Sequence record: LR756502.1
Direction: 5' to 3' (one strand)
Length of the DNA: 64,000 nucleotides
Below are positions 16,495 through 43,158 of the stretch, piece after piece (the first letter of the stretch is position 1; each line of letters starts with the position of its first letter). Position numbers and translations under genes: made by a program. Under the pieces are notes generated by a model that was not told where the DNA came from, did not search any database, and saw nothing but the letters and a program-made list of their open reading frames with translations.

Positions 16495-17088
16495 ATGTTT
16501 CAATCTTCAAAAACAGTTAAGCAGTTATTCTATGCCAATGTTGCAATTTTTATAATTGGTCTTTTACTGGAAGTGATAAATTTCCCATTCTATCAAACAT
16601 TTGCGCTATATCCAAAAGAGGGATTTATGTATCATCAATTGATAACACATCAATTTTTACATGGTGGGTTTATGCATATAGCATTTAATATGTTGGCTCT
16701 TCTTTCAATTGGTGCTCCCGTTGAGGACTATCTTGGTAGAAATAAGTTTATAATATTCTATCTAATGTGTGGTCTTGGATCTGCATTTCTTCACATGTAT
16801 ATGGTTAATTCTTCCGTTCCACTTGTTGGTGCTTCTGGTGCTATATATGGTATTCTTTTAATGTTTGCTATAATATCTCCAAATGAGAAAATATACTTGT
16901 TTGGGTTGATTGGTATGAGAGCGAAATATTTAGTTGGTGTATTATTTGGTGTTGAGATATTATTAGGTTTCTTATCAACTAATGATGGTATTGGTCACTT
17001 TGCACATATTGGTGGTGGGTTAACTAGTATATTACTAATACTTGTTGATAAATATCTTCCTAAAAAAAGAAAGAAAAGATGGTCGTAA
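16495..17088 (+). CDS. Rhomboid family intramembrane serine protease
   Basis: HQFLHGGFMHIAFNM, catalytic GASGAIYG and HFAHIGG; about 6 TM segments. Confidence 0.92.
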   Translation: MFQSSKTVKQLFYANVAIFIIGLLLEVINFPFYQTFALYPKEGFMYHQLITHQFLHGGFMHIAFNMLALLSIGAPVEDYLGRNKFIIFYLMCGLGSAFLHMYMVNSSVPLVGASGAIYGILLMFAIISPNEKIYLFGLIGMRAKYLVGVLFGVEILLGFLSTNDGIGHFAHIGGGLTSILLILVDKYLPKKRKKRWS

Positions 17089-17390
17089 ATATAGGAGATA
17101 CATTTAGAATTGATATGACTGAGGCGGTGAAAATTTTATATCCAAATATTTTGCGATGTAAATTTCCTAATAAGACATTCGTTGTAGAAAGGTTTAGCAA
17201 GAGCTCTAGGTCTGTCTATTATATAGATAATAGAACATCGAGTAAATGTGAGTGTGTGCTTTGTGATATGACTCCACAAGATAAATTCAGTGACCGTAAG
17301 ATGAAATGTGTTTCCGTAAATTTTATCATTATTACTGAAACAAAATTACAGAGAGAAAGAAATATAAAACTTAAACAAATATTAAAATGA
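17079..17390 (+). CDS. Hypothetical protein (Cys cluster) with C-terminal tag
   Basis: CECVLC; ends QRERNIKLKQILK. Confidence 0.7.
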   Translation: MVVNIGDTFRIDMTEAVKILYPNILRCKFPNKTFVVERFSKSSRSVYYIDNRTSSKCECVLCDMTPQDKFSDRKMKCVSVNFIIITETKLQRERNIKLKQILK

Positions 17391-17953
17391 AAGATAGATT
17401 ACTAATAATTGACTTAGACGAGACTATTATACACTCAGAGTCTTTTCCCGGTGATGATTATCTTGATAAGGGATCTTATGATTTTTCTTTTTCGATTGAT
17501 AATGAGTTCATCTATACAAGAAAGAGACCATTTTTAAAAGAGTTCATTGAATATGCCTTTTCTAACTTTAAAGTTGCTATATGGACCGCATCTGATGAGG
17601 TATATGCTAATACTATACTAGAGAAATGTAAAATACCTATATCTGAGTTAGAGTTCTTTTGGGCAAGAGATAGATGTACTATTAAAATGGACTATAATCT
17701 AAACAAATACTATGGGGTTAAGAACCTTAATAAGGTAAGAAGGTCTCTTAATTGGGATCTAAAAGATGTTCTTATAGTTGATGATATATATGCAACTGCT
17801 GAAAATAATTATGGTAACCTTATAAAGATAGAACCATTTGATTTTCAGAAAAATGATTCCGAGTTATTAAAATTAATTTCATACTTGGAAATCATAAAGG
17901 ATCAAGGTGATTTTAGAAGAATAGAGAAAAGAGGATGGTCAAATAGAAAATAA
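17387..17953 (+). CDS. HAD-superfamily NIF/FCP1-like phosphatase
   Basis: LLIIDLDETIIHS (DxDxT), KRPFLKEFI, IWTAS, LIVDD. Confidence 0.85.
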   Translation: MKDRLLIIDLDETIIHSESFPGDDYLDKGSYDFSFSIDNEFIYTRKRPFLKEFIEYAFSNFKVAIWTASDEVYANTILEKCKIPISELEFFWARDRCTIKMDYNLNKYYGVKNLNKVRRSLNWDLKDVLIVDDIYATAENNYGNLIKIEPFDFQKNDSELLKLISYLEIIKDQGDFRRIEKRGWSNRK

Positions 17954-18000: not shown

Positions 18001-18369
18001 ATGAAATATTTAAAAATTATGATGATATCTTGTTTATCTATGATGTCATTTACAATGAAGTCTCAATCCATTAATACATTTGATGTGATTGAAAATGGAA
18101 ATGTTCAGGAATCTGAAATTCCAAAGTATAAAGCGGCAATTCTGTCTTCCAATATGGAAAGCTATAGAAATAAATCAACTAGAGATACATTATCCTTCGA
18201 CAATGGTTTGAAATTTGTTTTATATTCCGCTCAAGAGTTATATATTCTTGGTTACGTTATATCCCCTAATGACTATGACTCCTATAGGGATCCAAAGTAT
18301 ACCAATCCAATATTCTATTTAAGTGATACTGGATATTTAATCGCATTATATAATCACATTGAAAAATAA
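18001..18369 (+). CDS. Secreted hypothetical protein
   Basis: Sec-type signal MKYLKIMMISCLSMMSFTMKSQ. Confidence 0.7.
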   Translation: MKYLKIMMISCLSMMSFTMKSQSINTFDVIENGNVQESEIPKYKAAILSSNMESYRNKSTRDTLSFDNGLKFVLYSAQELYILGYVISPNDYDSYRDPKYTNPIFYLSDTGYLIALYNHIEK

Positions 18370-18377
18370 TAAAACCT

Positions 18378-21300
18378 ATGAAAAAACTAATTTTAATAAC
18401 ATCTATTTTACTTACAAGTCTTTTAGCCTGGGCACAACCATCAAATGATAATTGTAGTGGGGCAATAAATATTGGTACATTACCAACACCATCAGCTTGT
18501 CCAGCTGGAGTGGGTACGACAGTTAACGTTGTGGGTACAAATATAGGTGCAACCGCACCAATGCCTTATACAACATTATTGGGTTGTCAAACAGGAGGAA
18601 ATCAACCAGGACCAGCATTAGATGTGTGGTATTCATTCGTTGCCTCAGGTAATCAAGTTAATATTAATATCACACCAGGTGGAGCACCTTTCTTACCGAG
18701 TCCGGCAATTACACTTTGGACTGGTACTTGTGGTGGTTTAATAGGTTATAATTGTGATAATAACGGTACTGCAGCTGGGGCAAACTCAGTATTGTATCAA
18801 CCTTTAACACCAGGTCAAACATATTATATTCAAGTAAGTGGTATGAATGCAACCGCTTCAGGTAATTTTAATATGGCAGTTAACGCAACTAATGATTGTA
18901 ATAACTGTCTTCAAACAGCTAATTTAACAGTAACACCAGCACCAGTGGGTGGTGTTTACGCACCAGGAACTACAGTATCATTTTGTTATCACATAACAGC
19001 TTACACTCAAGTAAGTGCAAACTGGTTACACGGAGTTGTACCAACATTCGGTTGTGGATGGGATTTAACAACACTTGTACCTTCACCTCCAGCATCTTGT
19101 GGTGGTAGTGGAACGTGGGCGTGGTATAACTCTTGGAGTGGTTCTATTGCGGCTACCGCCGGACCTTGGGGTCCAGGTTTCGCATTTGATTATACAACTG
19201 CCCCAGGTAATCCAGGAAATAACTTTGGTGATAACTGTGCAACACCTAATTGGAATTTCTGTTGGACAATCAAAACAAAATCAACTTGTACACCTGGTTG
19301 TACAAGTTTAAACATATCAATTAATACGTTAGGTGATGGTGAATCTGGTTCATGGGGTTCCATTGCTTGTCTAGGTGACCCTAATTATACATTCGCTGCT
19401 GTCTTATCTTGTTGCACTACAACAGCAACTTCGACAAACGTAACTTGTTTTGGTGGAACTAATGGAACAGCAACAGCAACACCAGGACCAACAGGTGTAT
19501 CACCTTTCACATATTCTTGGAATTCAACTCCGATTCAAACAACTCAAACCGCAACTGGTCTTCCTGCTGGGTCATATACCGTAACAGTTACAGACTTTAA
19601 TGGTTGTACTTCTACAGCAAGTGTAGTAATTACCCAACCAACAGCTATAACAGTACCAACCACATTTGTTAACGCAACATGTAGTTTATTAAATGGTTCA
19701 GTAACAGCAAACCCTGCTGGTGGCGTTGGACCATATTCCTATTCTTGGAACACAGTTCCAGTTCAAACAACACAAACCGCAACAGGTCTTCCTGCTGGAT
19801 CATACACCGTAACCGTAACCGGTTTTGGAGGATGTACAGCAACAGGAACAGCAATTGTTACTTCAACTGGTTCTATAACAACAACCGCAACTTCAACAAA
19901 TGTTTCTTGTTTTGGTGGAACTAATGGGACAGCAACTGCAAATCCATTGGGTGGTGGTCCATATACTTATTCTTGGAATACAGTTCCAGTTCAAACAACA
20001 CAAACAGCTACTGGTTTACCTATCGGTACTTATACCGTTACAGTTAATAGTTCAGGATGTACTGCAACAGCAAGTGTTATTATAACTCAACCTACTTTAT
20101 TAACAGCAACAACAACTGTTGTAAATACAACTTGTGGATTACCAAACGGTAGTACTACAGTAACACCAGCTGGTAGTGTTGGTCCATATACTTATTCTTG
20201 GAATACAGTTCCTGTTCAAACAACACAAACAGCAACAGGTCTTTTAGCTGGAACTTATATAGTCACAGTGACTGGTTTTGGTGGATGTACAGTAACCGCA
20301 ACATCTGTAATATCAAACACTGGAGCACCAACAGTAACAATCCCTACTCACGTAAACGTTTCTTGTTTTGGTGGAACTAATGGTTCCGCAAATTCAAACG
20401 TAGTTGGTGGTGTAGGACCTTTTAGTTATTCTTGGAACTCAACGCCAATACAAACAACCGCTAATGCAACTGGTCTTCCAGCTGGAACATATACAGTTAC
20501 TGTAACTGGTTCTAACTTATGTTCAGCAACAGCAAGTGTAATCATAACTCAACCTACATTATTAACCATTACCAACTCACAAACTAATGTGACTTGTAAT
20601 GGTGGAAGTAACGGAACGGCTACATCAAATCCTCTTGGTGGTGTGGGACCTTATACATATTCTTGGAATTCAACACCAATACAAACAACTCAAACCGCTA
20701 CAGGTCTACCTGTTGGTAATTATACTTGTACTGTAACTGATTTTAATGGTTGTATTATAACCACATTGGTTATTATTACACAACCTACTTTATTAACAGT
20801 AACTAACACACATACAAACCCTTTATGTAATGGTGGTTTTGGGACGGCTACTGCAAACCCAGTTGGGGGTGTTGGTCCATATACTTATTCTTGGAATTCC
20901 ACTCCAGTACAAACAACACAAACCGCAACTAATCTACTTGCAGGAACCTACATTTGTACTGTAACTGATTTTAGTGGTTGTTTTACTACGACAACAGTAA
21001 CTATAACTCAACCAACATTATTAACTTCAACAACATCAATGACTATATCAACTTGTGGTGTAGCAAATGGTACGGCAACAGTTAATCCAGTTGGTGGTGT
21101 AGGTCCTTATACCTATTTATGGTCTAATGGTGGTTTAACACAAACAATTACTACATTATTACCTGGTACCTATAATATTACTGTTACAGACGCTAACTTA
21201 TGTACTGTATCAAATAGTATTATCGTAACAAGTCCTGGGTCACCAACAGTAACAATTCCGACATCAACAAATGTTTCTTGTTTTGGTGGTTCAAATGGGA

Positions 21301-23390
21301 CAGCCAATTCAAATGTGGCTAGTGGTGTTGGTCCATTTATATATTCTTGGAATTCAACTCCAGTTCAAACAACAGCAAACGCAACAGGATTACCAATTGG
21401 TACTTATGTAGTTACTGTTACTGACGTTAACTTATGTATTACAACAGCAAGTATTATAATAACACAACCTACTTTATTAACTGCGGCAATCACAACTGTA
21501 AATGTAAATTGTAATGGTGGTGCAACTGGAACAGCAACCGCAACACCAGCAGGAGGTATTGGTCCTTATAGTTATTCTTGGAATACAGTTCCAGTTCAAA
21601 CTACTCAAACCGCAACAGGTTTAATAGCTGGGACATATAACGCCACGGTGACAGACTTTAATGGTTGTATTATAGTAGCTTCAGCTATTATCACTCAACC
21701 ACCTTTGTTAACCGTAGTAATTGGTTCATCAACTAATCCTTCTTGTAATGGTGGTAACAATGGTTCTATTACCGTAACAGAATTCGGTGGTGTGGGACCT
21801 TATTTATACTCAATCAATGGTGGGGCTAATCAATTATCACCAACATTTAATACTTTAGTTGCTGGGCCATATACTATGTTAGTTACTGACGCTAATTTAT
21901 GTACCGCAACAATTAATACTGTATTAACACAACCTACACCTATTTCAGCAGTACCTACTACAACTAACGTTACTTGTAATGGTTCTTGTGATGGCCAAAT
22001 TAGTTTACTAGTTGGTGGTGGTGTTGGTCCATATTCTTATAACTGGTCAAACGGTAGTACTGTTAATCCAGCAACAACTTTATGTGATGGAACATATACG
22101 GTTACAGTAACAGACGCTAACCTATGTACATTACCTCTTACTGGTTTAATCGTTACAGAACCAACAGCATTAACAGTAGGTCCTACAGCAACTCCAGCAA
22201 TAATTTGTATAGGACAATCGTCTACATTGAATTCTAACCCAGCTGGTGGAACTGGACCATATACTTACTTATGGTCTGATGGTAGTATCACACAAAATAT
22301 AACAGTATCACCTATTGTTACAACACCTTATACAGTAACAATAACAGATGCAAATGGTTGTACAGTTGTTGGTAACGTTACGGTTACAGTATCTACATCC
22401 TTAATTGGTGGAGCTACAGCAACCCCACCGACAATTTGTGTTGGTAGTTCATCTACTTTGAACGCTACAGCAAATGGTGGTAATGGTGGTCCATATACCT
22501 ACACTTGGAGTCCTGGTGGTGGCGTTGGTCAAACTATATCGGTATCGCCTTCCATAACTACAGTTTATACTGTTACTATATCTGATGGATGTAGCCCAAG
22601 TGTTACTGCAAATGTTACTGTTACTGTTAATCCATCACCTATCGTGAGTTATACAACAACACCATTGTCTGGATGTGAACCACTAACAATAACTTATACA
22701 AACACTACACCTGGATCATCAAGTTGTATTTGGACTATAAATGGTGTACCATATAACAACTGTGTGGTTACACAAACATTTACTACTGGGTCTTATAATG
22801 CTGTATTAACGGTTACTGATGTAAATGGTTGTATAGGTAACTCCGGTACTGTTGTTGCTAATATTTACCCAACACCTACTGCTCAATTTACTGCTAATCC
22901 TAATACTACTAATATACTTGATCCAACAGTTACTTTTAATAACCTAAGTTCACCTGGTACATATTTGTGGAGTTTTGGTGATGGTGTTACATCAACAGTT
23001 CCTTCACCTATATACAATTATACCGATACTGGAAGCTATAATGTTCAGTTAATAGTAACCACATCTTTTGGATGTGTTGATACCGCATATGGTAATGTTT
23101 ATATTTCAGATTTATTTTCTGTCTATGTGCCAAACGCTTTTACTCCTAATGGTGATGGTATAAATGATTCATTCTCACCAGTGGTTATGGGTGCTGATTA
23201 TTATGAATTTTGGATTTATAATCGTTGGGGTGAGTTAATCTTCGACTCAACAACATCAGGAACACCTTGGGATGGAACTTATAAAGGTCAACATGTTGAA
23301 CAAGATGTGTATGTTTGGAAATTATTCATACAAGAAAAGAATAAGGGTAAGAAACATAATTATATTGGTCACGTTACCATAGTAAAATAA
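18378..23390 (+). CDS. SprB-repeat / PKD adhesin-like protein with T9SS type-B (gliding-motility-associated) C-terminal domain
   Basis: Signal peptide; about 12-14 repeats of YSWN...TQTATGLPAGxYTVTVTDxNGC; PKD YLWSFGDG; CTD VPNAFTPNGDGINDSF...IYNRWGELIF...WDGTYKG...DVYVW...GHVTIVK. Confidence 0.9.
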   Translation: MKKLILITSILLTSLLAWAQPSNDNCSGAINIGTLPTPSACPAGVGTTVNVVGTNIGATAPMPYTTLLGCQTGGNQPGPALDVWYSFVASGNQVNINITPGGAPFLPSPAITLWTGTCGGLIGYNCDNNGTAAGANSVLYQPLTPGQTYYIQVSGMNATASGNFNMAVNATNDCNNCLQTANLTVTPAPVGGVYAPGTTVSFCYHITAYTQVSANWLHGVVPTFGCGWDLTTLVPSPPASCGGSGTWAWYNSWSGSIAATAGPWGPGFAFDYTTAPGNPGNNFGDNCATPNWNFCWTIKTKSTCTPGCTSLNISINTLGDGESGSWGSIACLGDPNYTFAAVLSCCTTTATSTNVTCFGGTNGTATATPGPTGVSPFTYSWNSTPIQTTQTATGLPAGSYTVTVTDFNGCTSTASVVITQPTAITVPTTFVNATCSLLNGSVTANPAGGVGPYSYSWNTVPVQTTQTATGLPAGSYTVTVTGFGGCTATGTAIVTSTGSITTTATSTNVSCFGGTNGTATANPLGGGPYTYSWNTVPVQTTQTATGLPIGTYTVTVNSSGCTATASVIITQPTLLTATTTVVNTTCGLPNGSTTVTPAGSVGPYTYSWNTVPVQTTQTATGLLAGTYIVTVTGFGGCTVTATSVISNTGAPTVTIPTHVNVSCFGGTNGSANSNVVGGVGPFSYSWNSTPIQTTANATGLPAGTYTVTVTGSNLCSATASVIITQPTLLTITNSQTNVTCNGGSNGTATSNPLGGVGPYTYSWNSTPIQTTQTATGLPVGNYTCTVTDFNGCIITTLVIITQPTLLTVTNTHTNPLCNGGFGTATANPVGGVGPYTYSWNSTPVQTTQTATNLLAGTYICTVTDFSGCFTTTTVTITQPTLLTSTTSMTISTCGVANGTATVNPVGGVGPYTYLWSNGGLTQTITTLLPGTYNITVTDANLCTVSNSIIVTSPGSPTVTIPTSTNVSCFGGSNGTANSNVASGVGPFIYSWNSTPVQTTANATGLPIGTYVVTVTDVNLCITTASIIITQPTLLTAAITTVNVNCNGGATGTATATPAGGIGPYSYSWNTVPVQTTQTATGLIAGTYNATVTDFNGCIIVASAIITQPPLLTVVIGSSTNPSCNGGNNGSITVTEFGGVGPYLYSINGGANQLSPTFNTLVAGPYTMLVTDANLCTATINTVLTQPTPISAVPTTTNVTCNGSCDGQISLLVGGGVGPYSYNWSNGSTVNPATTLCDGTYTVTVTDANLCTLPLTGLIVTEPTALTVGPTATPAIICIGQSSTLNSNPAGGTGPYTYLWSDGSITQNITVSPIVTTPYTVTITDANGCTVVGNVTVTVSTSLIGGATATPPTICVGSSSTLNATANGGNGGPYTYTWSPGGGVGQTISVSPSITTVYTVTISDGCSPSVTANVTVTVNPSPIVSYTTTPLSGCEPLTITYTNTTPGSSSCIWTINGVPYNNCVVTQTFTTGSYNAVLTVTDVNGCIGNSGTVVANIYPTPTAQFTANPNTTNILDPTVTFNNLSSPGTYLWSFGDGVTSTVPSPIYNYTDTGSYNVQLIVTTSFGCVDTAYGNVYISDLFSVYVPNAFTPNGDGINDSFSPVVMGADYYEFWIYNRWGELIFDSTTSGTPWDGTYKGQHVEQDVYVWKLFIQEKNKGKKHNYIGHVTIVK

Positions 23391-23804: not shown

Positions 23805-23981
23805 ATGAAAACTATCGACAATGATTCAGGTGAATTTGACTTATCACAAGTAACTTTTACTTTCACTTGTGATTATTGGATGCCTACTTTTTCTAACAAG
23901 GAAGAGAATAGGAAGAAGAGGATAGAGAAAATACTGACTAATTTAAATGACAAAGAAGGAACTAAAGGCATTATTCTCTAG
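23805..23981 (+). CDS. Small ORF missed by the track (58 aa) with tag
   Basis: MKTIDNDSGEFDLSQVTFTFTCDYWMPTFSNKEENRKKRIEKILTNLNDKEGTKGIIL*. Confidence 0.55.
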   Translation: MKTIDNDSGEFDLSQVTFTFTCDYWMPTFSNKEENRKKRIEKILTNLNDKEGTKGIIL

Positions 23982-25446
23982 GCCAGATTGGGATGATAAT
24001 ACAATCATCGAGGCTGATAAGATTATATCTAGGATATCAAAAGAGTATCTTGGTTTAGATACCTATCCAAATCAATTTGAGATTGTTTCATCTGAGCAGA
24101 TGTTGGATGCCTATTCACTTATAGGTCTACCTATTTCATACAACCACTGGAAGTTTGGAAAGGACTTCGTAATAAACCAAAATCAATATAAAAAAGGTAA
24201 GATGGGACTGGCATATGAGTTAGTTATAAACTCAAATCCATGTATATCTTATAATATGGAAGACAATACAACTTGTCTAATGGTTCTTGTTTTGGCTCAT
24301 GCTGCTTATGGACACAATCACTTCTTTAAGAATAACTATTTATTCAAACAGTGGACACAAGCAGACTCAATAATTGACTATATGTTGTTTGCTAAGAACT
24401 ACATTTCTAAATGTGAGGAGAAATATGGTTATGAGGAAGTTGAATCGACTCTTGATGCTTGTCACGCTCTAATGAATTATGGTGTTGATAAGTATAAGAA
24501 GCCACGTAAGCTAACTCCTATGGAAGAACAAGAGAGATTAAAAAAGAAGCTAGAGGATGATAGAGTTCTTTTGGATGATATATGGAGAACACTGCCAAAT
24601 TCTGAAAAAGATAAAAAGACTAATCCAAATAGATTTCCATCACAACCAGAAGAAAATATTCTATATTTTATTGAAAAAAACTCTCCTAAATTAAAGGAGT
24701 GGCAAAGAGAGATTGTTCGTATAGTTAGAAAAGTTTCGCAATATTTCTATCCACAAGGTCAGAGTAAGGTTGTTAATGAAGGTTGTGCGACCTTTACACA
24801 CTATGAAATTATAAATAGGATGTATGAGGAGGGATATCTTGATGATGGGTTTATGATGGAGTTCTATCACAACCATTCAAACGTTATATTCCAACCAGCA
24901 TTTGACTCAAAGTATTACTCTGGTATAAATCCATATACCTTAGGCTTTAATATATTCAATGACTTAAAGAGAATGTCTCTTAAGCCAACTGATGAAGATA
25001 AGCATTGGTTTCCTGATATTGCTGGTAACCCTAATTGGCAAGAAACTTTTAGATATATTGTTGAGAATTTCAAGGATGAGACATTTGTTTTGCAATACTT
25101 ATCTCCAAAGGTGATAAGGGATATGAAGTTATTTGCTGTTGATGATAAGAGTGAGAGTAACTACTATGAGGTTACATCAATTCATAATGAGAGTGGGTAT
25201 AAGAAGGTAAGAGAGTCTTTGTCGATGTCATATAATAGGAGTCGATATGTTCCTGATATACAAGTATATCACGTTGATGTGCATGGTGATAGAACAATAT
25301 CACTTGAGTATATCCCTGAGAGTGGTAAGGAATTAGAGGTAAGAGAAGTTGATAAGGTTCTCCCTTATATTAAGTATTTATGGGGATTTCCGGTCAAGGT
25401 TATAAAGAGAGAGAATGGTAAAAAATACGTAATTTCTACCATATAA
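23947..25446 (+). CDS. SpoVR / YcgB family protein
   Basis: YPNQFEIVSSEQMLDAY..IGLPISYNHWKFGK, LAYELVINSNP, AHAAYGHNHFFKNN, YFYPQGQSKVVNEGCATF, NPYTLGF. Confidence 0.92.
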   Translation: MTKKELKALFSRPDWDDNTIIEADKIISRISKEYLGLDTYPNQFEIVSSEQMLDAYSLIGLPISYNHWKFGKDFVINQNQYKKGKMGLAYELVINSNPCISYNMEDNTTCLMVLVLAHAAYGHNHFFKNNYLFKQWTQADSIIDYMLFAKNYISKCEEKYGYEEVESTLDACHALMNYGVDKYKKPRKLTPMEEQERLKKKLEDDRVLLDDIWRTLPNSEKDKKTNPNRFPSQPEENILYFIEKNSPKLKEWQREIVRIVRKVSQYFYPQGQSKVVNEGCATFTHYEIINRMYEEGYLDDGFMMEFYHNHSNVIFQPAFDSKYYSGINPYTLGFNIFNDLKRMSLKPTDEDKHWFPDIAGNPNWQETFRYIVENFKDETFVLQYLSPKVIRDMKLFAVDDKSESNYYEVTSIHNESGYKKVRESLSMSYNRSRYVPDIQVYHVDVHGDRTISLEYIPESGKELEVREVDKVLPYIKYLWGFPVKVIKRENGKKYVISTI

Positions 25447-25486
25447 TTCAATAAAATTCCGTATGTTTGTATAAACAATCAGATAT

Positions 25487-27007
25487 ATGAGCAATCTAAC
25501 AAGAAACAAAATTCTTTCAGTTTTCATTGTACTAAGTACATTGTTTACTCTATTAGGTGTTTTTACTAACATATTTTTCCTAATCCCTTGTGGGTTATCT
25601 ACCCTTGGGTTACTTATTGTTATTAAGGACATTACACAATCAAAACATTCACTTCTAAGAAACTATCCATTGATAGGTAGACTAAGATGGGTATTTGAAC
25701 AAGAAAGAAGTAAAATTCAACAATATTTTGTTGAACATGACACTAACGGTACTCCTTATAACCGTGAGAAGAGATCTGATGTATATCAGAAAGCGAAAAA
25801 AGATATAAACACCACACCATTTGGTACTCAAATGGATGTCTATGAGAATGGATATGAATTTATAAAACATTCTCTATACCCAAAAGATACTGACTCTATA
25901 AAGGAACCAAGAATTAACATTGGATCTAAATTCTGTTCACAACCATATAACGCTAGTGTATTTAATGTTAGTGCTATGAGTTATGGTGCATTATCAGATG
26001 CTGCTGTTAGAGCAATAAATGGTGGTGCTAAGATTGATAGATTTTATCAGAATACTGGTGAGGGTGGTTTGTCTTCATATCATTTAGAGAACGGTGGTGA
26101 TATTTGTTTTCAAATTGGTACTGGATATTTTGGAGCTGGTAAAACAGTTAATGGTAAACGAGTTTTTGATGAAGAAACATTCAAACAAAATGCACTTCGT
26201 AAAGAAGTTAAGATGATTGAGATTAAACTTTCACAAGGTGCTAAACCTGGACATGGTGGTATCCTACCTGCTAAGAAAAATACACAAGAAATTGCAACAA
26301 TTCGTGGTGTTGAACCAGGTGTTGATGTTGTTAGTCCACCATATCATTCATCTTTTAATAGCCCAGAGACTATGTTGAAGTTTATAAAAAAACTTAGAAG
26401 TCTAAGTGGTGGTAAACCAATTGGTATTAAGATGTGTATGGGTGATAATGATGAAGTATTAAATCTAATATGTACAATGAAACGCATTAATACATTTCCT
26501 GACTTCATAACTATAGATGGTGGTGAAGGTGGTACTGGAGCAGCCCCACTTGTTTTCACTAATAGTGTTGGCACACCACTTATTGATTCACTCATTTTCA
26601 TTGACAAACATCTAAGAATTAATGGTCTTAGAGATCAGATTAGAATTATTGCTAGTGGTAAAGCGTCAAATAGCTTTGATGTTATTAAATTAATTTCTCT
26701 TGGTGCTGATGCTGTAAACGCGGCTAGAGCATTTATGTTAAGTCTTGGATGTATTCAAGCAAGAGAGTGTAATAAAAACACTTGTCCTGTTGGGATAGCA
26801 ACACAAAATAAACAACTTATAAAGGGATTAGACCCATCTGAAAAGAAAGTTCGTGTGGCTAATTATCATAACGGTGTTATTCACGAGATAAAAGAGGTAT
26901 TGGGTGCTATGGGGTTGGATTCAACTGAGAACTTAACACCTAGTCATATAAATATCAGAATTGATAAGTCACAAATATTAACATATAAAGAACTATTTAA
27001 ATTATAA
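25487..27007 (+). CDS. FMN-binding glutamate synthase family protein (membrane-anchored, YerD-like)
   Basis: SAMSYGALS, NTGEGG, MIEIKLSQGAKPGHGGILP, DFITIDGGEGGTGAAP, CIQARECNKNTCPVGIATQ; two N-terminal TM helices. Confidence 0.93.
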   Translation: MSNLTRNKILSVFIVLSTLFTLLGVFTNIFFLIPCGLSTLGLLIVIKDITQSKHSLLRNYPLIGRLRWVFEQERSKIQQYFVEHDTNGTPYNREKRSDVYQKAKKDINTTPFGTQMDVYENGYEFIKHSLYPKDTDSIKEPRINIGSKFCSQPYNASVFNVSAMSYGALSDAAVRAINGGAKIDRFYQNTGEGGLSSYHLENGGDICFQIGTGYFGAGKTVNGKRVFDEETFKQNALRKEVKMIEIKLSQGAKPGHGGILPAKKNTQEIATIRGVEPGVDVVSPPYHSSFNSPETMLKFIKKLRSLSGGKPIGIKMCMGDNDEVLNLICTMKRINTFPDFITIDGGEGGTGAAPLVFTNSVGTPLIDSLIFIDKHLRINGLRDQIRIIASGKASNSFDVIKLISLGADAVNAARAFMLSLGCIQARECNKNTCPVGIATQNKQLIKGLDPSEKKVRVANYHNGVIHEIKEVLGAMGLDSTENLTPSHINIRIDKSQILTYKELFKL

Positions 27008-38748: not shown

Positions 38749-41700
38749 TTAACTAAAGAGAAAATCAAAGCTAACATCTTTGTTATCTTCTACAAATTTC
38801 TTAAGATCTTCCTGGTTAAGATCTCTAATTGATCGACCATCCGATAACTTGACCTCGTATATAAAATTATAATCCCCACCATTTGCTCCAGCTGTTGGAT
38901 CTTTTAGTAATCCATTTAATATATCCATTATATCTTCTGTACTCATATCTCCTGGTTCGTTTAGTTGGTTACAAAGCTTTATATGTGGTGCTGGTATAAT
39001 AGCCTCTATCCCAAGAGTAGACCAAACAAAGTCTATTATTCCATTTATTAATCCTTCTAATAAACATAAAATTGAGTATAGTATTCTGAATGGCTTCTTA
39101 AGCATATCAAGAAATTGATCCTTTTTAACTTTTGGCATCTTTGCTATCAATGCAATATCAATAACCTCTGATAGATCAAACTCATAATCTTTTGGGAAAT
39201 TTTTTAAGTTACTTACCCATCCTATTAGTTTTGGTATGTCAAACTTTATGCCAGCTAACTCCAGTAATTTTGTTGGTTTGAAGAAGTCCATTATCCATTG
39301 GAATGATAGTAGGTCTGACATTTTTGATGGCAACTCTGGTAGTTTTGATAGACTTTTAAAGAAGTCCATTAACCATTGTATTATACCCGCAATTATCTTA
39401 ATTGGTAGTGATACTATCTCTATTAAGAATTTTAGTATAGGTTGTATATAGTTATTACTCTTTTTAAATAGGTCATCAAATTTACTCTGTAAAAGAGGAT
39501 TTTTTGGATCAGATTTCAATGCTAACTCAAGCTTTGCCTTTGCTAACTCAATATTATCTGGATCATTTGTTTGTTCAAGTTCGTCCGCCTCCTTAACAAG
39601 TTTAGCAACATACTCAGTTAGATATATGTATTTATAGTCAACTCCCTCAACAAACTTACCAGTTGAATATTGTATTGATACTTCCTCTGTATTTTGCTTA
39701 CCATTTGATTCTGTTACAATAGTATTTTTAACACTATTTTGATCTGCCCTTAGATCAATATTTCCTGTGCTGTCAATAACTGGCTTTGTGTCTTTATTTA
39801 AGAATGAATCAAGTGTTTTATTAGGAATATCATTGAAGTCAACTGATGATATAAGACTAATTAATGGCTTTAACATAGATAATTGCATACCAAATGTTAT
39901 TGTATTGCCAAGTATTGGTAGCTTCATTAGGCCTGATCCATCAAGTAAAAACTTATAACTACCATCCGGACTAACTGAAATATAATTACTAAGTACTGAC
40001 TTCTTTATGAAGTTAGCTCTATCACCAACTGCTATACTTGGTAGTTTCTTCATAACATCCATTGACTCTGGTGAGAATATTAGAAAACTCTCACCAAGTT
40101 TTTGAGATATTATATCTGTTATAAAACTAGCTGGATTCTTAAATAATTCCAATAGCTTTTTTATTGCTGGTACTAGCTTTGAGAAGATGTCTGCTAGCAT
40201 TGATAAAAATACCTTTGTTGCTCCAAGAGCATTAGGCATTCTATACCATTCAATTCCAGCTGCATTCTGATTACTACCTCCTATTCCACTTTGTACATTG
40301 TCATCAATTAAAATACCTTCAACTATATAATATGTTTCTGTGTCTAGTTCAGTCTTCATATATCTTTTGATAATACCAACCTCTTGTGGTGTTCCACCAT
40401 ACTTACCTTGTGAGTATAACTCTGGATGTGTTAAATGGTTGTTAGTTATTTTACTTGGATCAATCATTTTGCCATATTTTGTTGTGTCTTTTACTCTCAC
40501 CTGGAATGCCGGTATATCAATTGTACTAACCGATATATCGAATGTTTCATTATTACCAAATGTGTTATAAAGAAGTGAGATACTATTATTCTTTCTAAAA
40601 CCGGGCATTATAGCTTTCTCATTTATAACTGTATTAAGATCTAATTGACTTCTCCAAACTATCCATCTTTTAACTTTATAGTTATCAACCTCTATTAGCG
40701 ATTTGTCATCAAGTGTTTTTTCTCCATTTGCTACTTGTATATATGTTCTTAGTTCCTTTGATACCTTAATGTCGTCAAACTGCCAAATAGAAGATGACGC
40801 TGTTGCTCCTGGGATTACGCCTATATGAAACTTACTAGAATTTACTAACCTTGTTTGTGGTAGTGATCCGTTCGCGATGCTAGTAGTTTCAATAGTTTGC
40901 CAATCAATGGAAAAGTTATTCTCATTCCATGACGCTGGTGCATCGTTGTGCCAATCTGCTGATGATTCAGTAGACTTTTTATAATACCATCTAATTATTC
41001 GACTAGTGTGTAGGCTTGCTGATTGTAAGGTTTGTATAGTTACTTTTGTAACTATTTCCCCATTCAATGTAGGGCTTCCTTCGATATTGTATTCCGCTGT
41101 TGATGAGCTTATAGGAATAGGTGATATCGTCTCAGTTGTGCTTGTTACTGAATACTCCCTGTATGACCACTGTGTAGTTGAGTCATTAACCTGTCTCTCC
41201 ATTTCTATATAAATATTATTCTGTAATGGGAAAGTAATGTTATTTTTACCAACAAAATAAGGATTCTCATCATATCTCCAAGTCTCAATTTTATATGAGT
41301 TATTGTTATTTAGCTCTGGTTTTATTGGACCAGATAATCCATCAACATCATCATAGTTCCAGTTGTCTAGTTGATATTCTGTTATGTTTTCGAATATTTT
41401 AGCATCTTCTTGGTTCTTAGTTACACTTATACTGAATGGTAATTTTGTTTTATTATTATCTATATCTATACTAAGAGAGTTCTTTATAAAGCTTAGTATC
41501 TGTGTTTCAACTTCTGGGCTTCCTTGAGCATCTTCATATCTAATATCAAGTGCAGAATCGACCTTTATCACCTTTAAGTCATAGTCTGATTCTGGATCCA
41601 TCCAAATATCACTTCCAGATATTTTAAGCTTACTTGGTTTGAATGGGTATTTCAATCCACTTGGTATATCCATTACTTGCTGATTATTTGGATTAACAAA

Positions 41701-43158
41701 TGTACTTGCGTTTAGTATTCCATACTTAAAGGCGTTGTCTATGTGATTATCTATTTGTGTTTTCTCAAGAGTGTATGTTCCTACTCTTTTAGTTCCCTCA
41801 TCATCTTTAACATCTAGCTTTGATATAACCTCATTTATGTACCCAGATTTCTCATCAGGATCAAGTCCAGGTGATGAGTTTATCTTTTTTGATACTAAAT
41901 CGGTAAAGTAATCTATGAATTCATTTCTCTCATTTGTTCCGGTGAAATCAACAATATATTCTCCCTTACGAAGGCCATCTTCATATTTCTTCCTAGTGAA
42001 CTCATCACCTCCACCAGCATCTGGCTTTGATTGTTGTCTTCTTATATCAGCACCTCCATATCTCTCCCAATAATAAAATGGTGATCCAAACCTAGGCCAA
42101 TTATACTGAGATGATATACTAGCTATGTTATTTGGAAAGTACCATTTATCAGACCTTGTTATCCAATCAGCTACATAAAAAGGAGTATCTGCCTCATTTC
42201 CAAACTGGTCTAATGTTTTTAACTTAGTCATTGGGTTTATAATCTCTCCCTTGCTGTTAAATATACCAAATATTACTTTTTTAGGCTTTAATTTTTTATA
42301 TGGATCGTCATCTTCTAGACTTAAATCGGAATTTGAATCCTCAGTAACAACTGAATCATCTTTAACATCTTTGTATGTGTATTTATATTCGATAGATGGA
42401 TCAAAAACTCCTGTTGAGTATACTGTTGATATTATTCTATAATCTCCATCAACTACATCAGTTGAGTTTGACTCTGGTGTTCCATCAGTTGTTGTTTTAG
42501 TTGGGGACTTTTTACTTAATGATTGAAGCTTACCAAGACTTGATTTTATATCTTCTCCAGATTTATATCCAATCGCCTTTGGTCTGCCATTTGTTATACC
42601 AGCATTTGTCTTTGGTTTCTCTGACTGTACTGTAAGCTTGGCTTCCGTTGGTAGTGGTGCTAATATTGGCATGAACCTAGCTATTATATCTTCAACCTTA
42701 GCTATATTATCAATAACTAGTTTAGCAATCTCTATGTAAGGCTTCTGTGTTTCAAATATTGACTTTAATATCGTTTTCTCCATTGCCTTAACGCCCATTA
42801 GATCGTTTGATGGGTCCAAACTTATTAAATCTTTTGGTATGCTATATCCATTTTTTGTTTTATATTTTGATGGATCTGGTATGTCTAGTTTGACAAGCTT
42901 TGCAAATTGCTTAAATGATTCTTCGTCTTTGCACTTATTTATATTCTTTAGCATCATTGACTTCTTCATTGAGTCTGCTATACCAATATCCCCATTGACA
43001 AATTTAGTTATATAATCAATATTTGGTAGTAGAAGAGATGAGTTGGCTGTCATTCCTATTGACTTAGATATTTCACTTATTGGACCTGGCATAGCAAGAG
43101 ATACGTGAAATTTAATTGGACTATCAGGATAAGTTGGAAATAAACCAGGTAAAGACAT
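38749..43158 (-). CDS. Large (1469 aa) hypothetical protein, probably virion-associated
   Basis: Long uninterrupted ORF; AATATATA upstream; helical Pro-punctuated ends and beta-rich centre; function is inference. Confidence 0.7.
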   Translation of the reverse strand: MSLPGLFPTYPDSPIKFHVSLAMPGPISEISKSIGMTANSSLLLPNIDYITKFVNGDIGIADSMKKSMMLKNINKCKDEESFKQFAKLVKLDIPDPSKYKTKNGYSIPKDLISLDPSNDLMGVKAMEKTILKSIFETQKPYIEIAKLVIDNIAKVEDIIARFMPILAPLPTEAKLTVQSEKPKTNAGITNGRPKAIGYKSGEDIKSSLGKLQSLSKKSPTKTTTDGTPESNSTDVVDGDYRIISTVYSTGVFDPSIEYKYTYKDVKDDSVVTEDSNSDLSLEDDDPYKKLKPKKVIFGIFNSKGEIINPMTKLKTLDQFGNEADTPFYVADWITRSDKWYFPNNIASISSQYNWPRFGSPFYYWERYGGADIRRQQSKPDAGGGDEFTRKKYEDGLRKGEYIVDFTGTNERNEFIDYFTDLVSKKINSSPGLDPDEKSGYINEVISKLDVKDDEGTKRVGTYTLEKTQIDNHIDNAFKYGILNASTFVNPNNQQVMDIPSGLKYPFKPSKLKISGSDIWMDPESDYDLKVIKVDSALDIRYEDAQGSPEVETQILSFIKNSLSIDIDNNKTKLPFSISVTKNQEDAKIFENITEYQLDNWNYDDVDGLSGPIKPELNNNNSYKIETWRYDENPYFVGKNNITFPLQNNIYIEMERQVNDSTTQWSYREYSVTSTTETISPIPISSSTAEYNIEGSPTLNGEIVTKVTIQTLQSASLHTSRIIRWYYKKSTESSADWHNDAPASWNENNFSIDWQTIETTSIANGSLPQTRLVNSSKFHIGVIPGATASSSIWQFDDIKVSKELRTYIQVANGEKTLDDKSLIEVDNYKVKRWIVWRSQLDLNTVINEKAIMPGFRKNNSISLLYNTFGNNETFDISVSTIDIPAFQVRVKDTTKYGKMIDPSKITNNHLTHPELYSQGKYGGTPQEVGIIKRYMKTELDTETYYIVEGILIDDNVQSGIGGSNQNAAGIEWYRMPNALGATKVFLSMLADIFSKLVPAIKKLLELFKNPASFITDIISQKLGESFLIFSPESMDVMKKLPSIAVGDRANFIKKSVLSNYISVSPDGSYKFLLDGSGLMKLPILGNTITFGMQLSMLKPLISLISSVDFNDIPNKTLDSFLNKDTKPVIDSTGNIDLRADQNSVKNTIVTESNGKQNTEEVSIQYSTGKFVEGVDYKYIYLTEYVAKLVKEADELEQTNDPDNIELAKAKLELALKSDPKNPLLQSKFDDLFKKSNNYIQPILKFLIEIVSLPIKIIAGIIQWLMDFFKSLSKLPELPSKMSDLLSFQWIMDFFKPTKLLELAGIKFDIPKLIGWVSNLKNFPKDYEFDLSEVIDIALIAKMPKVKKDQFLDMLKKPFRILYSILCLLEGLINGIIDFVWSTLGIEAIIPAPHIKLCNQLNEPGDMSTEDIMDILNGLLKDPTAGANGGDYNFIYEVKLSDGRSIRDLNQEDLKKFVEDNKDVSFDFLFS

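What the first reader, a model, noticed from the sequence alone, without database searches (positions are those of the whole stretch)
18001..23390. Phage-encoded 1670-aa SprB-like surface protein addressed to the host type IX secretion system
Seen in sequence: signal peptide, Cys-rich N-terminal region, about 12-14 SprB-type repeats, PKD domains and an intact type-B CTD. Established: SprB is the Flavobacterium gliding adhesin, and type-B CTD cargo normally needs a PorP/SprF-family partner, often encoded next door. No such beta-barrel gene is adjacent here, only a 122-aa secreted protein. Inference: the phage displays its own adhesin on infected cells via the host T9SS, which could alter gliding, adhesion or aggregation, mask receptors, or act as a decoy against superinfection.
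Basis: partly seen in the sequence, partly recalled or inferred. Interest (0 to 1): 0.68.

Follow-up and report, generated by a model that had tools for sequence, protein, structure and literature searches.

The report
Megaphage-encoded T9SS surface adhesin module
A 642-kb phage of Bacteroidota carries a conserved two-gene unit, a long stalked adhesin-like protein plus a small secreted partner, that carries the signals for export by the host's type IX secretion system, so the phage probably changes the surface of the cells it infects.

Summary
ORF 18378-23390 (+) encodes 1670 aa: a Sec signal peptide, a Cys-rich 330-aa head, 13-14 SprB-type repeats, PKD domain(s) and a full type-B T9SS C-terminal domain (CTD).

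The window is part of the huge phage LR756502. The gene is not a chimera:
- It sits at the same syntenic place in at least five related huge-phage contigs.
- Its GC3 is as low as its neighbours'.
- Independent contigs bridge both ends.
- It evolves under purifying selection.

New points:
- The head is a PPC/collagen-binding-domain fold plus an adhesin-type beta-sandwich.
- The upstream 122-aa protein is a dedicated partner. Homologues lie directly upstream in 49 of 102 loci, and it is 1:1 and single-copy in five bacterial genomes.
- The missing PorP/SprF gene is normal for this family, in bacteria too ("orphan" type-B cargo).
- The same phage has three more signal-peptide + CTD ORFs, one of them a CTD with no cargo.
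- Other huge phages split the protein into head, stalk and anchor genes.

It is not a SprB orthologue. Phage-encoded T9SS cargo has been reported before (type A). Secretion, surface display and the benefit to the phage remain inferred.

The parts
18001..18369 (+). Gene for a 122-aa secreted partner protein: signal peptide, Gln at +1, about 100-aa mature part with no known family.
   Evidence: Homologues lie directly upstream of the big gene in 49 of 102 loci, bacterial and viral. In five bacterial genomes there is one strong copy each, always next to the one full head-domain gene. No match in Pfam, PHROGs or PDB.
18378..23390 (+). Gene for the 1670-aa type-B-CTD adhesin-like protein (whole ORF including the stop).
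18378..18434 (+). Sec signal peptide (aa 1-19). The predicted cleavage exposes Gln20, as in the Bacteroidota 'Q-rule'.
   Evidence: Sequence. Q20 is invariant in alignment A3. The Q-rule is described in PMC5837995.
18435..18890 (+). Head subdomain 1 (aa 20-171): a PPC / collagen-binding-domain-like beta-sandwich, and a divergent relative of Pfam GBD_T9SS_assoc.
   Evidence: AlphaFold2 model with pLDDT 90.1. Matches ColG s3b (5iku, 1nqd) at Z 11, rmsd 2.5-2.7 A, 105-108 residues aligned, 23-24% identity. PF23759 hits 24 of 62 family members and PF04151 hits 13 of 62. PDB profile hit 2luw at E 0.0099.
18894..19415 (+). Head subdomain 2 (aa 173-346): a Cys-rich beta-sandwich of the adhesin/pilin type.
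   Evidence: Sgo0707 (4igb) Z 8.4, CLIPPER domain (9ifr) Z 8.3, pilins Z about 8. These values are borderline; they show the fold only.
19422..22622 (+). Stalk of 14 units of about 77 aa. Twelve are SprB-type repeats and two are variant Ig-like units; each holds two Cys.
   Evidence: DNA-level tandem repeats of period 228 with 73-74% matches. Short-read contigs break only here, at 19984-20183.
22875..23084 (+). PKD domain (aa 1500-1569). A second PKD-like unit lies just upstream, judged by eye.
   Evidence: PKD_4, E 4e-10; sequence.
23127..23387 (+). Type-B T9SS C-terminal sorting domain (aa 1584-1670).
   Evidence: The alignment with other type-B CTDs shows the conserved blocks.

Best explanation
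The two genes at 18001-23390 form one module carried by a Bacteroidota-infecting megaphage. During infection both proteins would be exported by the host Sec system (inferred from their signal peptides). The large protein would then be passed across the outer membrane by the host type IX secretion system through its type-B C-terminal domain. It would be held on the cell surface by a host PorP/SprF-type shuttle or anchor, because the phage encodes none. This is the same route used by 'orphan' type-B substrates in Flavobacterium johnsoniae. On the surface it would stand as a fibrillar adhesin: a stalk of about 16 Ig-like domains carrying a distal head made of a PPC/collagen-binding-domain-like binding module and an adhesin-type beta-sandwich. 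I take the 100-aa partner to be a dedicated periplasmic or surface helper of the head-bearing protein (for folding, protection or docking), because it co-occurs 1:1 with it. My committed reading of the benefit has two parts. First, the phage re-coats the infected cell with its own version of a host accessory adhesin, changing what the cell sticks to (particles, polymers, neighbouring cells). Second, because type-B shuttles work stoichiometrically and are not recycled, the phage protein takes anchor sites away from host type-B adhesins. Shown here: the domain anatomy, the phage location, conservation and purifying selection, the partner linkage, and the absence of a phage shuttle. Inferred: export, display, the ligand, and the benefit.
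For: Anatomy. Phage identity: 100% match to LR756502.1, flanked by T4-type topoisomerase II subunits. Not a chimera: the order topoIV-A / 109-aa / rhomboid / NIF / [small] / big / 121-aa / SpoVR is kept in L013, L100, L101, L110 and L111. GC3 is 0.148 against 0.17-0.31 in neighbours, and the excess GC lies only at codon position 2. Contigs of two runs bridge both gene ends at equal depth. Function is kept in phages: dN/dS of the head is 0.09-0.21 among phage copies, including 0.106 at dS 0.32. The window copy lies in a supported clade of 12 rows, 10 viral plus 2 short contigs. Partner linkage. Q at +1 in both proteins. No PorP/SprF in this phage or in five other huge viral records that each carry type-B CTD ORFs. 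In bacterial carriers none of the 6-20 PorP/SprF genes is adjacent to the module. Orphan substrates, a shared shuttle and stoichiometric non-recycled shuttles are described in PMC12618676; anchoring by PorP-like proteins in PMC9143113. The same phage has three more signal-peptide + CTD ORFs. The host phylum was predicted as Bacteroidetes for phages above 634 kb (PMC7162821).
Against: There is no experimental or expression evidence: no RNA run holds the region. The host is unknown, so neither its T9SS nor a matching shuttle could be examined. The CTD is only 37-38% identical to that of the nearest clearly bacterial homologue, which is below the identity levels (over 44%) at which shuttle sharing was seen in F. 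johnsoniae; the true host copy may be closer. The ligand of the head is unknown, since a PPC fold does not fix specificity. The partner's fold and its contact with the big protein could not be predicted. The family is rare among sampled Bacteroidota, so little is known about its cellular role.
Confidence: 0.62

Rival explanations
1. The main purpose is interference. The phage cargo, together with the phage's cargo-less signal-peptide + CTD protein, saturates host type-B shuttles or the translocon. This removes host type-B adhesins (possible phage receptors, gliding adhesins) from the surface, giving superinfection exclusion or immobilising the cell. Binding by the head would be secondary.
For: Type-B shuttles are stoichiometric and not recycled, and overproduced CTD fusions are not secreted without extra shuttle (PMC12618676). 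The phage encodes a 116-aa ORF that is only a signal peptide plus a type-B CTD. Similar 110-117-aa ORFs recur on other viral contigs. The phage supplies no shuttle.
Against: A blocker would not need a 1670-aa protein whose head is conserved under strong purifying selection. It also would not need a dedicated partner. The head is the best-kept part across phages, even where the CTD sits on a separate gene.
Confidence: 0.15
2. The protein is secreted but not retained. It is released into the medium or on vesicles as a soluble binding protein, for example a decoy that binds competing phages or a polymer.
For: The fate of type-B cargo depends on the shuttle, and none is encoded here. In several phages the head is a separate protein without any CTD.
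Against: Known type-B substrates stay bound to their PorP-like protein at the surface (PMC9143113). The long Ig-like stalk is the design of an anchored fibril.
Confidence: 0.1
3. A host gene picked up as a passenger, with no role in the phage life cycle.
For: Bacterial homologues exist (59-64% identity in the head). Bacterial and viral copies interleave in the wider clade.
Against: It holds a fixed syntenic position in at least five diverged huge phages. dN/dS is about 0.1. Codon position 3 is fully phage-like. The reading frame and both sorting signals are intact.
Confidence: 0.06
4. A virion component: a fibre or decoration protein with Ig-like domains.
For: Ig-like repeats and binding heads are common on phage particles. 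BFVD fold matches include phage proteins with similar domains.
Against: A cleavable Sec signal plus a T9SS CTD sends the protein out of the cytoplasm, where virions are assembled. The same two-gene module sits in bacterial chromosomes between housekeeping genes. There is no PHROG match, and the neighbours are DNA-metabolism and auxiliary genes.
Confidence: 0.05
5. An assembly chimera joining phage and host DNA.
For: The gene's GC is higher (0.38) than the flanks (0.30).
Against: The excess GC is at codon position 2 only, while GC3 is 0.148. Synteny holds in independent assemblies from other samples. Logan contigs cross both junctions at equal depth.
Confidence: 0.01

Closest known systems
'Orphan' type-B CTD substrates of Flavobacterium johnsoniae (Fjoh_1123, Fjoh_1720, Fjoh_4934) served by the unlinked shuttle Fjoh_1677 (PMC12618676)
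   Same: A type-B CTD, predicted adhesin character, and no porP/sprF-like gene next to the substrate gene, so dependence on a shuttle encoded elsewhere.
   Different: Here the substrate is on a phage and the shuttle would be on another genome, the host's. A small dedicated partner gene lies upstream. Sequence relatedness to those three proteins was not tested, because no sequences were at hand.
SprB, the gliding adhesin of F. johnsoniae (sprC-sprD-sprB-sprF operon)
   Same: SprB-type repeats, a type-B CTD, and a long filament-like surface protein.
   Different: It is four times shorter (1670 against about 6500 aa, from my own knowledge). No SprF was found. It has a different head (PPC-type). 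Its nearest relatives form a separate family. No evidence ties it to the gliding track.
Phage-encoded T9SS cargo: 'Cryophage' (PMC7468147) and crAss-like phages (PMC6949934)
   Same: Phage genes carrying T9SS sorting domains, presumed to use the host system.
   Different: The Cryophage genes carry type-A CTDs on an endoglucanase, a glycoside hydrolase and a PA14-domain protein, and type-A cargo uses the general PorV shuttle. For the crAss-like phages the paper names only 'T9SS sorting domains'. Here the CTD is type B, which needs a specific shuttle, on a fibrillar adhesin-like protein with a partner gene, in megaphages.
Collagen-binding domains (PPC fold) of clostridial collagenases ColG and ColH
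   Same: The fold of head subdomain 1 (Z 10.6-11.1, 23-24% identity to ColG s3b).
   Different: There is no collagenase context. Ligand-binding residues were not compared. The head is disulfide-rich and fused to a second beta-sandwich.
Fibrillar adhesins (for example Streptococcus gordonii Sgo0707; the CLIPPER-domain adhesin of Gram-negatives)
   Same: The overall design: a distal binding head, a stalk of repeated Ig-like domains, and a cell anchor. Head subdomain 2 resembles their beta-sandwiches (Z about 8.3-8.4).
   Different: The anchor is a T9SS type-B CTD rather than sortase or type I secretion. The fold similarity is at the level of a common arrangement.

Membership tests
T9SS type-B CTD cargo (TIGR04131 / PF13585) | C-terminal type-B sorting domain at the very end of the protein | tested here: met
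   TIGR04131 at 50.1 bits (cut-off 35), aa 1584-1668. PF13585 at 52.6 bits (cut-off 27). Conserved blocks align with other type-B CTDs.
T9SS type-B CTD cargo (TIGR04131 / PF13585) | N-terminal Sec signal peptide | tested here: met
   By inspection of the sequence: a positive N-region, a hydrophobic core, and A-W-A followed by Q. Q20 is invariant in homologues. No signal-peptide predictor was available.
T9SS type-B CTD cargo (TIGR04131 / PF13585) | Cognate PorP/SprF-like shuttle, usually encoded directly downstream | tested here: not met
   No PF11751 match in the whole 642-kb phage record at E <= 0.1, nor in five related viral records. It is also not adjacent in bacterial carriers. This is not disqualifying, since orphan substrates are known.
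T9SS type-B CTD cargo (TIGR04131 / PF13585) | The five CTD motifs A-E required for secretion (PMC12618676) | tested here: inconclusive
   The paper's text does not spell out the motifs. The profile match covers almost the whole domain, and conserved blocks are present.
T9SS type-B CTD cargo (TIGR04131 / PF13585) | Secretion depends on the T9SS of the producing cell | not testable with these tools
   The host is uncultured and unknown. Only the phylum (Bacteroidetes) was predicted, by the source paper.
SprB orthologue (gliding adhesin) | SprB-type repeats | tested here: met
   PF13573 in 13 stretches, E 6e-95.
SprB orthologue (gliding adhesin) | Operon partner SprF (and SprC, SprD) | tested here: not met
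   No PorP/SprF in the record. The neighbours are a 122-aa secreted protein and a 121-aa cytoplasmic ORF. SprC and SprD were not searched.
SprB orthologue (gliding adhesin) | Nearest relatives are SprB proteins | tested here: not met
   The nearest relatives share the PPC-type head and are 1000-2700-aa proteins, unnamed or generically annotated ('gliding motility-associated C-terminal domain-containing protein'), on phage and Bacteroidota contigs.
SprB orthologue (gliding adhesin) | Movement along the gliding track; required for motility | not testable with these tools
   This needs live-cell experiments.
Head-domain + small-partner module (unnamed family defined here) | Cys-rich head of about 330 aa matching profile A4 | tested here: met
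   The window protein is the seed of the profile. It is 46-79% identical to 61 homologues, with 26 invariant columns.
Head-domain + small-partner module (unnamed family defined here) | Gene of about 120 aa for a secreted protein directly upstream on the same strand | tested here: met
   Gene at 18001-18369 with an 8-nt gap. Its homologues hold the same position in 48 other loci.
PPC / GBD_T9SS_assoc domain (PF04151 / PF23759) | Sequence match above the Pfam threshold | tested here: not met
   The window copy itself gives no hit at E <= 0.1. Of the family members, 24 of 62 hit PF23759 and 13 of 62 hit PF04151.
PPC / GBD_T9SS_assoc domain (PF04151 / PF23759) | PPC-type beta-sandwich fold | tested here: met
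   Z 9.3-11.1 to ColG and ColH collagen-binding domains and a B. anthracis PPC domain, covering model residues 1-152. The model has pLDDT 90.1.

The most novel reading that the evidence does not exclude
Huge phages of Bacteroidota carry a modular toolkit aimed at the host's type-B branch of the T9SS. It would include surface fibrils built from a conserved PPC-type head, either fused to stalk and CTD (as in this window, with a small partner) or split into separately secreted head, stalk and CTD-anchor subunits. The CTD-less subunits share a C-terminal P-I-x-H-N/D tag, which could be a new docking or sorting signal. The toolkit would also include cargo-less signal-peptide + CTD proteins that could occupy host shuttles. 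Together these would let the phage replace the host's own adhesin coat during infection.
Probability: 0.25. Interest if true: 0.75.

Novelty: new variant of a known kind. Interest (0 to 1): 0.55.

Why it matters
Type-B T9SS cargo needs a specific outer-membrane shuttle that also serves as its anchor. A phage that brings such cargo without a shuttle must therefore fit a host shuttle and compete for it. That would be a concrete and testable way for a virus to rewrite the adhesin coat, and perhaps the gliding or aggregation behaviour, of environmental Bacteroidota. The work also defines an uncharacterised two-gene surface module shared by bacteria and megaphages. It points to natural CTD-only proteins and to split head/stalk/anchor versions, which could be useful probes of how type-B CTDs are recognised.

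Tried and rejected
- Full-length homologue search: the search with all 1670 aa timed out, so I searched the head alone.
- Structure of the 122-aa partner: the job failed and stayed counted. It succeeded later.
There is no verdict on binding.
- Families for the partner: none in Pfam, NCBIfam, PHROGs or PDB. The ESM Atlas lead 'DUF4858' scored only 0.81, and none of 41 family members hit that Pfam family, so I dropped it.
- Are the 'genome' rows nested among viral rows just mis-binned phage? This is not so for L026, whose contig also carries a bacterial-type 871-aa gyrA/parC-like gene. L020 and L021 (4-8-kb contigs, one nearly identical to a viral contig) probably are phage.
- Is the module widespread in the phylum? 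No. In 300 other sampled Bacteroidota genomes the partner was found in none and the head in one. Only 7-14 candidates per genome were scored, so sensitivity was limited.
- RNA families and tRNAs near the gene: none.
- Expression: no RNA run holds the stretch.
- Source paper: its main text and supplements do not mention this gene, SprB or the T9SS.
- The sigma-70 promoter scan was not used, because Bacteroidota and megaphage promoters differ from that consensus.
Full report
**1. What is there**

The window matches LR756502.1 at 100% identity. This is an uncultured phage of 642,428 bp, and window base 1 corresponds to record base 496001. It is one of the largest phage genomes reported by Al-Shayeb et al. 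[quoted passage not shown]

ORF 18378-23390 (+) encodes 1670 aa. Its parts are:
- SprB repeats: Pfam finds 13 stretches (E 6e-95).
- PKD: a PKD_4 domain at aa 1500-1569.
- CTD: CHU_C at aa 1584-1663. NCBIfam TIGR04131, the type-B T9SS sorting domain, covers 3-83 of its 85 positions.
- Stalk: a motif count gives 13 units of 75-78 aa plus one earlier unit, so about 14 Ig-like repeats. Each holds two Cys.
- N-terminus: a Sec signal peptide followed by Gln.
- Head: residues 20-350 hold 17 Cys.

The 122-aa ORF at 18001-18369 also has a signal peptide and stops 8 nt before the big gene.

**2. Is it really phage DNA?**

Yes, on four lines of evidence.
- Neighbours. They are T4-type topoisomerase II subunits, a rhomboid protease, a NIF phosphatase, SpoVR and a glutamate-synthase domain protein, among many ORFans.
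- Synteny. The order topoIV-A / 109-aa / rhomboid / NIF / small gene / big gene / 121-aa / SpoVR recurs in a 617-kb JGI contig (L013). All or part of this order also recurs on IMG/VR contigs of 385, 41, 281 and 176 kb.
- Composition. The higher GC of the gene (0.38 against 0.30) comes only from codon position 2, reflecting Thr, Gly, Pro and Ala. GC3 is 0.148, as low as or lower than its neighbours.
- Assembly. Logan contigs of two runs, possibly from the source samples, cross both ends of the gene at equal depth. They break only inside the repeat zone at 19984-20183.

The chimera rival is refuted.

**3. Relatives and evolution**

The head (aa 1-350) finds 404 proteins. The closest (69-79% identity) lie on phage-like contigs where I checked. 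A scan of species genomes found 292 relatives. Nearly all are labelled Bacteroidota; a few carry other labels, which I take for binning or labelling errors and did not check. IMG/VR gave 17 viral loci.

In a maximum-likelihood tree of 99 head domains, the window copy lies in a supported clade of 12 rows. Ten are viral and two are short contigs, one of them almost identical to a viral contig. The wider clade of 25 rows holds 16 viral and 9 genome rows, with a Crocinitomicaceae chromosomal copy (L016) as its earliest branch. In L016 the gene lies between lpxD/lpxC/lpxA-cinA and gcvH, and the head is 59-64% identical to the window's.

At least one nested genome row (L026) is truly bacterial. A second viral clade (L113-L116) sits elsewhere in the tree. 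Genes have therefore moved between phages and bacteria more than once; I did not establish the direction.

Among phage copies, dN/dS of the head is 0.09-0.21. Most dS values are near saturation, but the pair L109/L107 gives 0.106 at dS 0.32. The gene is kept by selection in phages.

**4. The small neighbour is a partner, not a bystander**

- Homologues of the 122-aa protein lie directly upstream, on the same strand, in 49 of 102 loci examined. These include bacterial chromosomes and viral contigs.
- In five bacterial genomes there is exactly one strong copy, each next to the one full-length head-domain gene. Those genomes hold many other type-B cargo and shuttle genes.
- Gln after the signal peptide is nearly invariant, as expected for exported Bacteroidota proteins (PMC5837995).
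- The family has no Pfam, PHROG, NCBIfam or PDB relative.
- Its fold and its contact with the big protein could not be computed.

It is about 100 aa when mature, too small to be a beta-barrel shuttle. I infer a dedicated helper for folding, protection or docking.

**5. The head**

An AlphaFold2 model built from 62 homologues is confident (pLDDT 90.1, pTM 0.80).
- Model residues 1-152 adopt the PPC / collagen-binding-domain fold. They match ColG s3b at Z 11 (rmsd 2.5-2.7 A, 23-24% identity), ColH at Z 10.6, and a B. anthracis PPC domain at Z 9.3. This agrees with Pfam GBD_T9SS_assoc or PPC hits in many family members, though not in the window copy itself, and with a weak PDB profile hit.
- Model residues 154-327 form a beta-sandwich like those of Gram-positive adhesins and pilins and the CLIPPER domain (Z about 8). 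That level shows only a common arrangement.

Head, stalk and anchor together give the design of a fibrillar adhesin.

**6. The missing shuttle**

No PorP/SprF gene exists in the whole phage record. None exists in five other huge viral records that each carry one or two type-B CTD ORFs. The same model found 6-20 copies per bacterial genome.

In the bacterial carriers no PorP/SprF gene is adjacent to the module either. The nearest one, in L016, is paired with a different CHU_C gene. The family therefore belongs to the 'orphan' class.

In F. johnsoniae, three of twelve type-B substrates are orphans that share the unlinked shuttle Fjoh_1677. Shuttles there are needed in stoichiometric amounts and are not recycled (PMC12618676). 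Type-B proteins stay bound to their PorP-like protein at the surface (PMC9143113).

The phage protein would have to use a host shuttle and would thereby compete with host cargo. Its CTD is 59-68% identical to those of related phages but only 37-40% identical to those of two homologues on apparently bacterial contigs (L015, L016). The true host's copy is unknown.

**7. More T9SS cargo in the same phage and in other phages**

LR756502 has three further ORFs with a signal peptide plus a CTD:
- an 898-aa type-B protein;
- a 186-aa type-A protein;
- a 116-aa ORF that is a signal peptide followed directly by a type-B CTD.

A limited pattern scan found type-B CTD ORFs on 52 IMG/VR contigs, including several more 110-117-aa CTD-only ORFs.

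In eight viral loci from at least four lineages the head is not fused to a CTD. Three consecutive genes, each with its own signal peptide, encode:
- a head protein of 425-632 aa;
- an Ig-like protein of 181-195 aa;
- a protein of 188-197 aa carrying a type-B CTD.

One of the eight (L113) shows only the first two. The two CTD-less proteins end in a shared P-I-x-H-N/D motif. The ESM Atlas's best cluster for the head, 430-aa proteins that are 94% viral, fits this. I cannot explain the motif.

**8. Comparison with what is known**

Phage-encoded T9SS cargo has been reported. 'Cryophage' carries type-A CTDs on two glycoside hydrolases and a PA14-domain protein (PMC7468147). Some crAss-like phages carry T9SS sorting domains (PMC6949934). 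My searches found no report of type-B cargo, of this module, or of this gene in phages, and the source paper does not mention it.

The protein is SprB-like only in its repeats and CTD class. It lacks SprF and has a different head, and its relatives form their own family. I file it as a new variant of a known kind.

**9. Verdict**

- Shown: the anatomy, the phage origin, conservation, partner linkage, and the absence of a phage shuttle.
- Inferred: export by Sec and the T9SS, anchoring on a host shuttle, adhesin function, and any effect on gliding, aggregation or superinfection.

Noticed in passing
LR756502.1 about 597508-597858, minus strand (outside the window; L018:3509-3859); also L117, L134, L136, L137, L146, L168: ORFs of 110-117 aa that consist only of a Sec signal peptide (mostly with Gln at +1) followed directly by a type-B T9SS CTD. 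They recur on several viral contigs. They could be natural cargo-less competitors for PorP/SprF shuttles or the translocon.
   Followed up: partly
L107-L109, L111, L112, L113-L116 (about 3 kb downstream from each head-domain start): A split form of the module: three consecutive genes, each with its own signal peptide, for a head protein (425-632 aa), an Ig-like protein (181-195 aa) and a CTD-B anchor (188-197 aa). L113 shows only the first two. The two CTD-less proteins end in a shared P-I-x-H-N/D motif of unknown meaning. There is no 122-aa partner gene in these loci.
   Followed up: partly
LR756502.1 about 415688-418384 (L017:2689-5385) and about 325583-326143 (L019:3584-4144): Two more predicted T9SS cargo genes in the same phage: an 898-aa type-B CTD protein with Ig-like repeats, and a 186-aa type-A CTD protein. 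Both have signal peptides.
   Followed up: partly
window 16495-17088 and 17387-17953 (+): A rhomboid intramembrane protease and a NIF/CTD-like phosphatase lie just upstream of the module. The rhomboid keeps that place in four related huge-phage contigs and the phosphatase in two. No link to the secreted proteins was tested.
   Followed up: no
window 61500-63716 (-): A 738-aa protein with collagen triple-helix repeats lies in the same window as an adhesin whose head has a collagen-binding-domain-like fold. This may be coincidence, since collagen-like repeats are common in phage fibres.
   Followed up: no
window 23947-27007 (+): A SpoVR-like protein (E 2e-157) and a protein with the conserved region of glutamate synthase lie directly downstream. 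They look like auxiliary, host-like genes of the megaphage.
   Followed up: no
window 38749-43158 (-): A 1469-aa ORF with no Pfam or PHROG match.
   Followed up: no
L013:4535-7586 and L013:639-2402: In the related 617-kb phage contig the topoIV-A-like gene appears as two pieces (167 and 415 aa) around a 427-aa ORF. The GyrB-like gene has a weak intein hit. These may be mobile insertions in the topoisomerase genes.
   Followed up: no
L109:2012-6004: A 1330-aa secreted protein lies directly upstream of the split module. By eye it has two N-D-N...D-V-W-Y-K PPC-like segments and a C-terminus that looks like a type-A CTD. No profile was run on it.
   Followed up: no
L020, L021, L037, L041, L051, L071, L094, L097 (genome contigs titles): Contigs carrying this Bacteroidota/phage gene sit in MAGs labelled Dehalococcoidales, Bifidobacterium, Legionellaceae or Comamonadaceae. 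These are probably binning or labelling errors in the public records.
   Followed up: no
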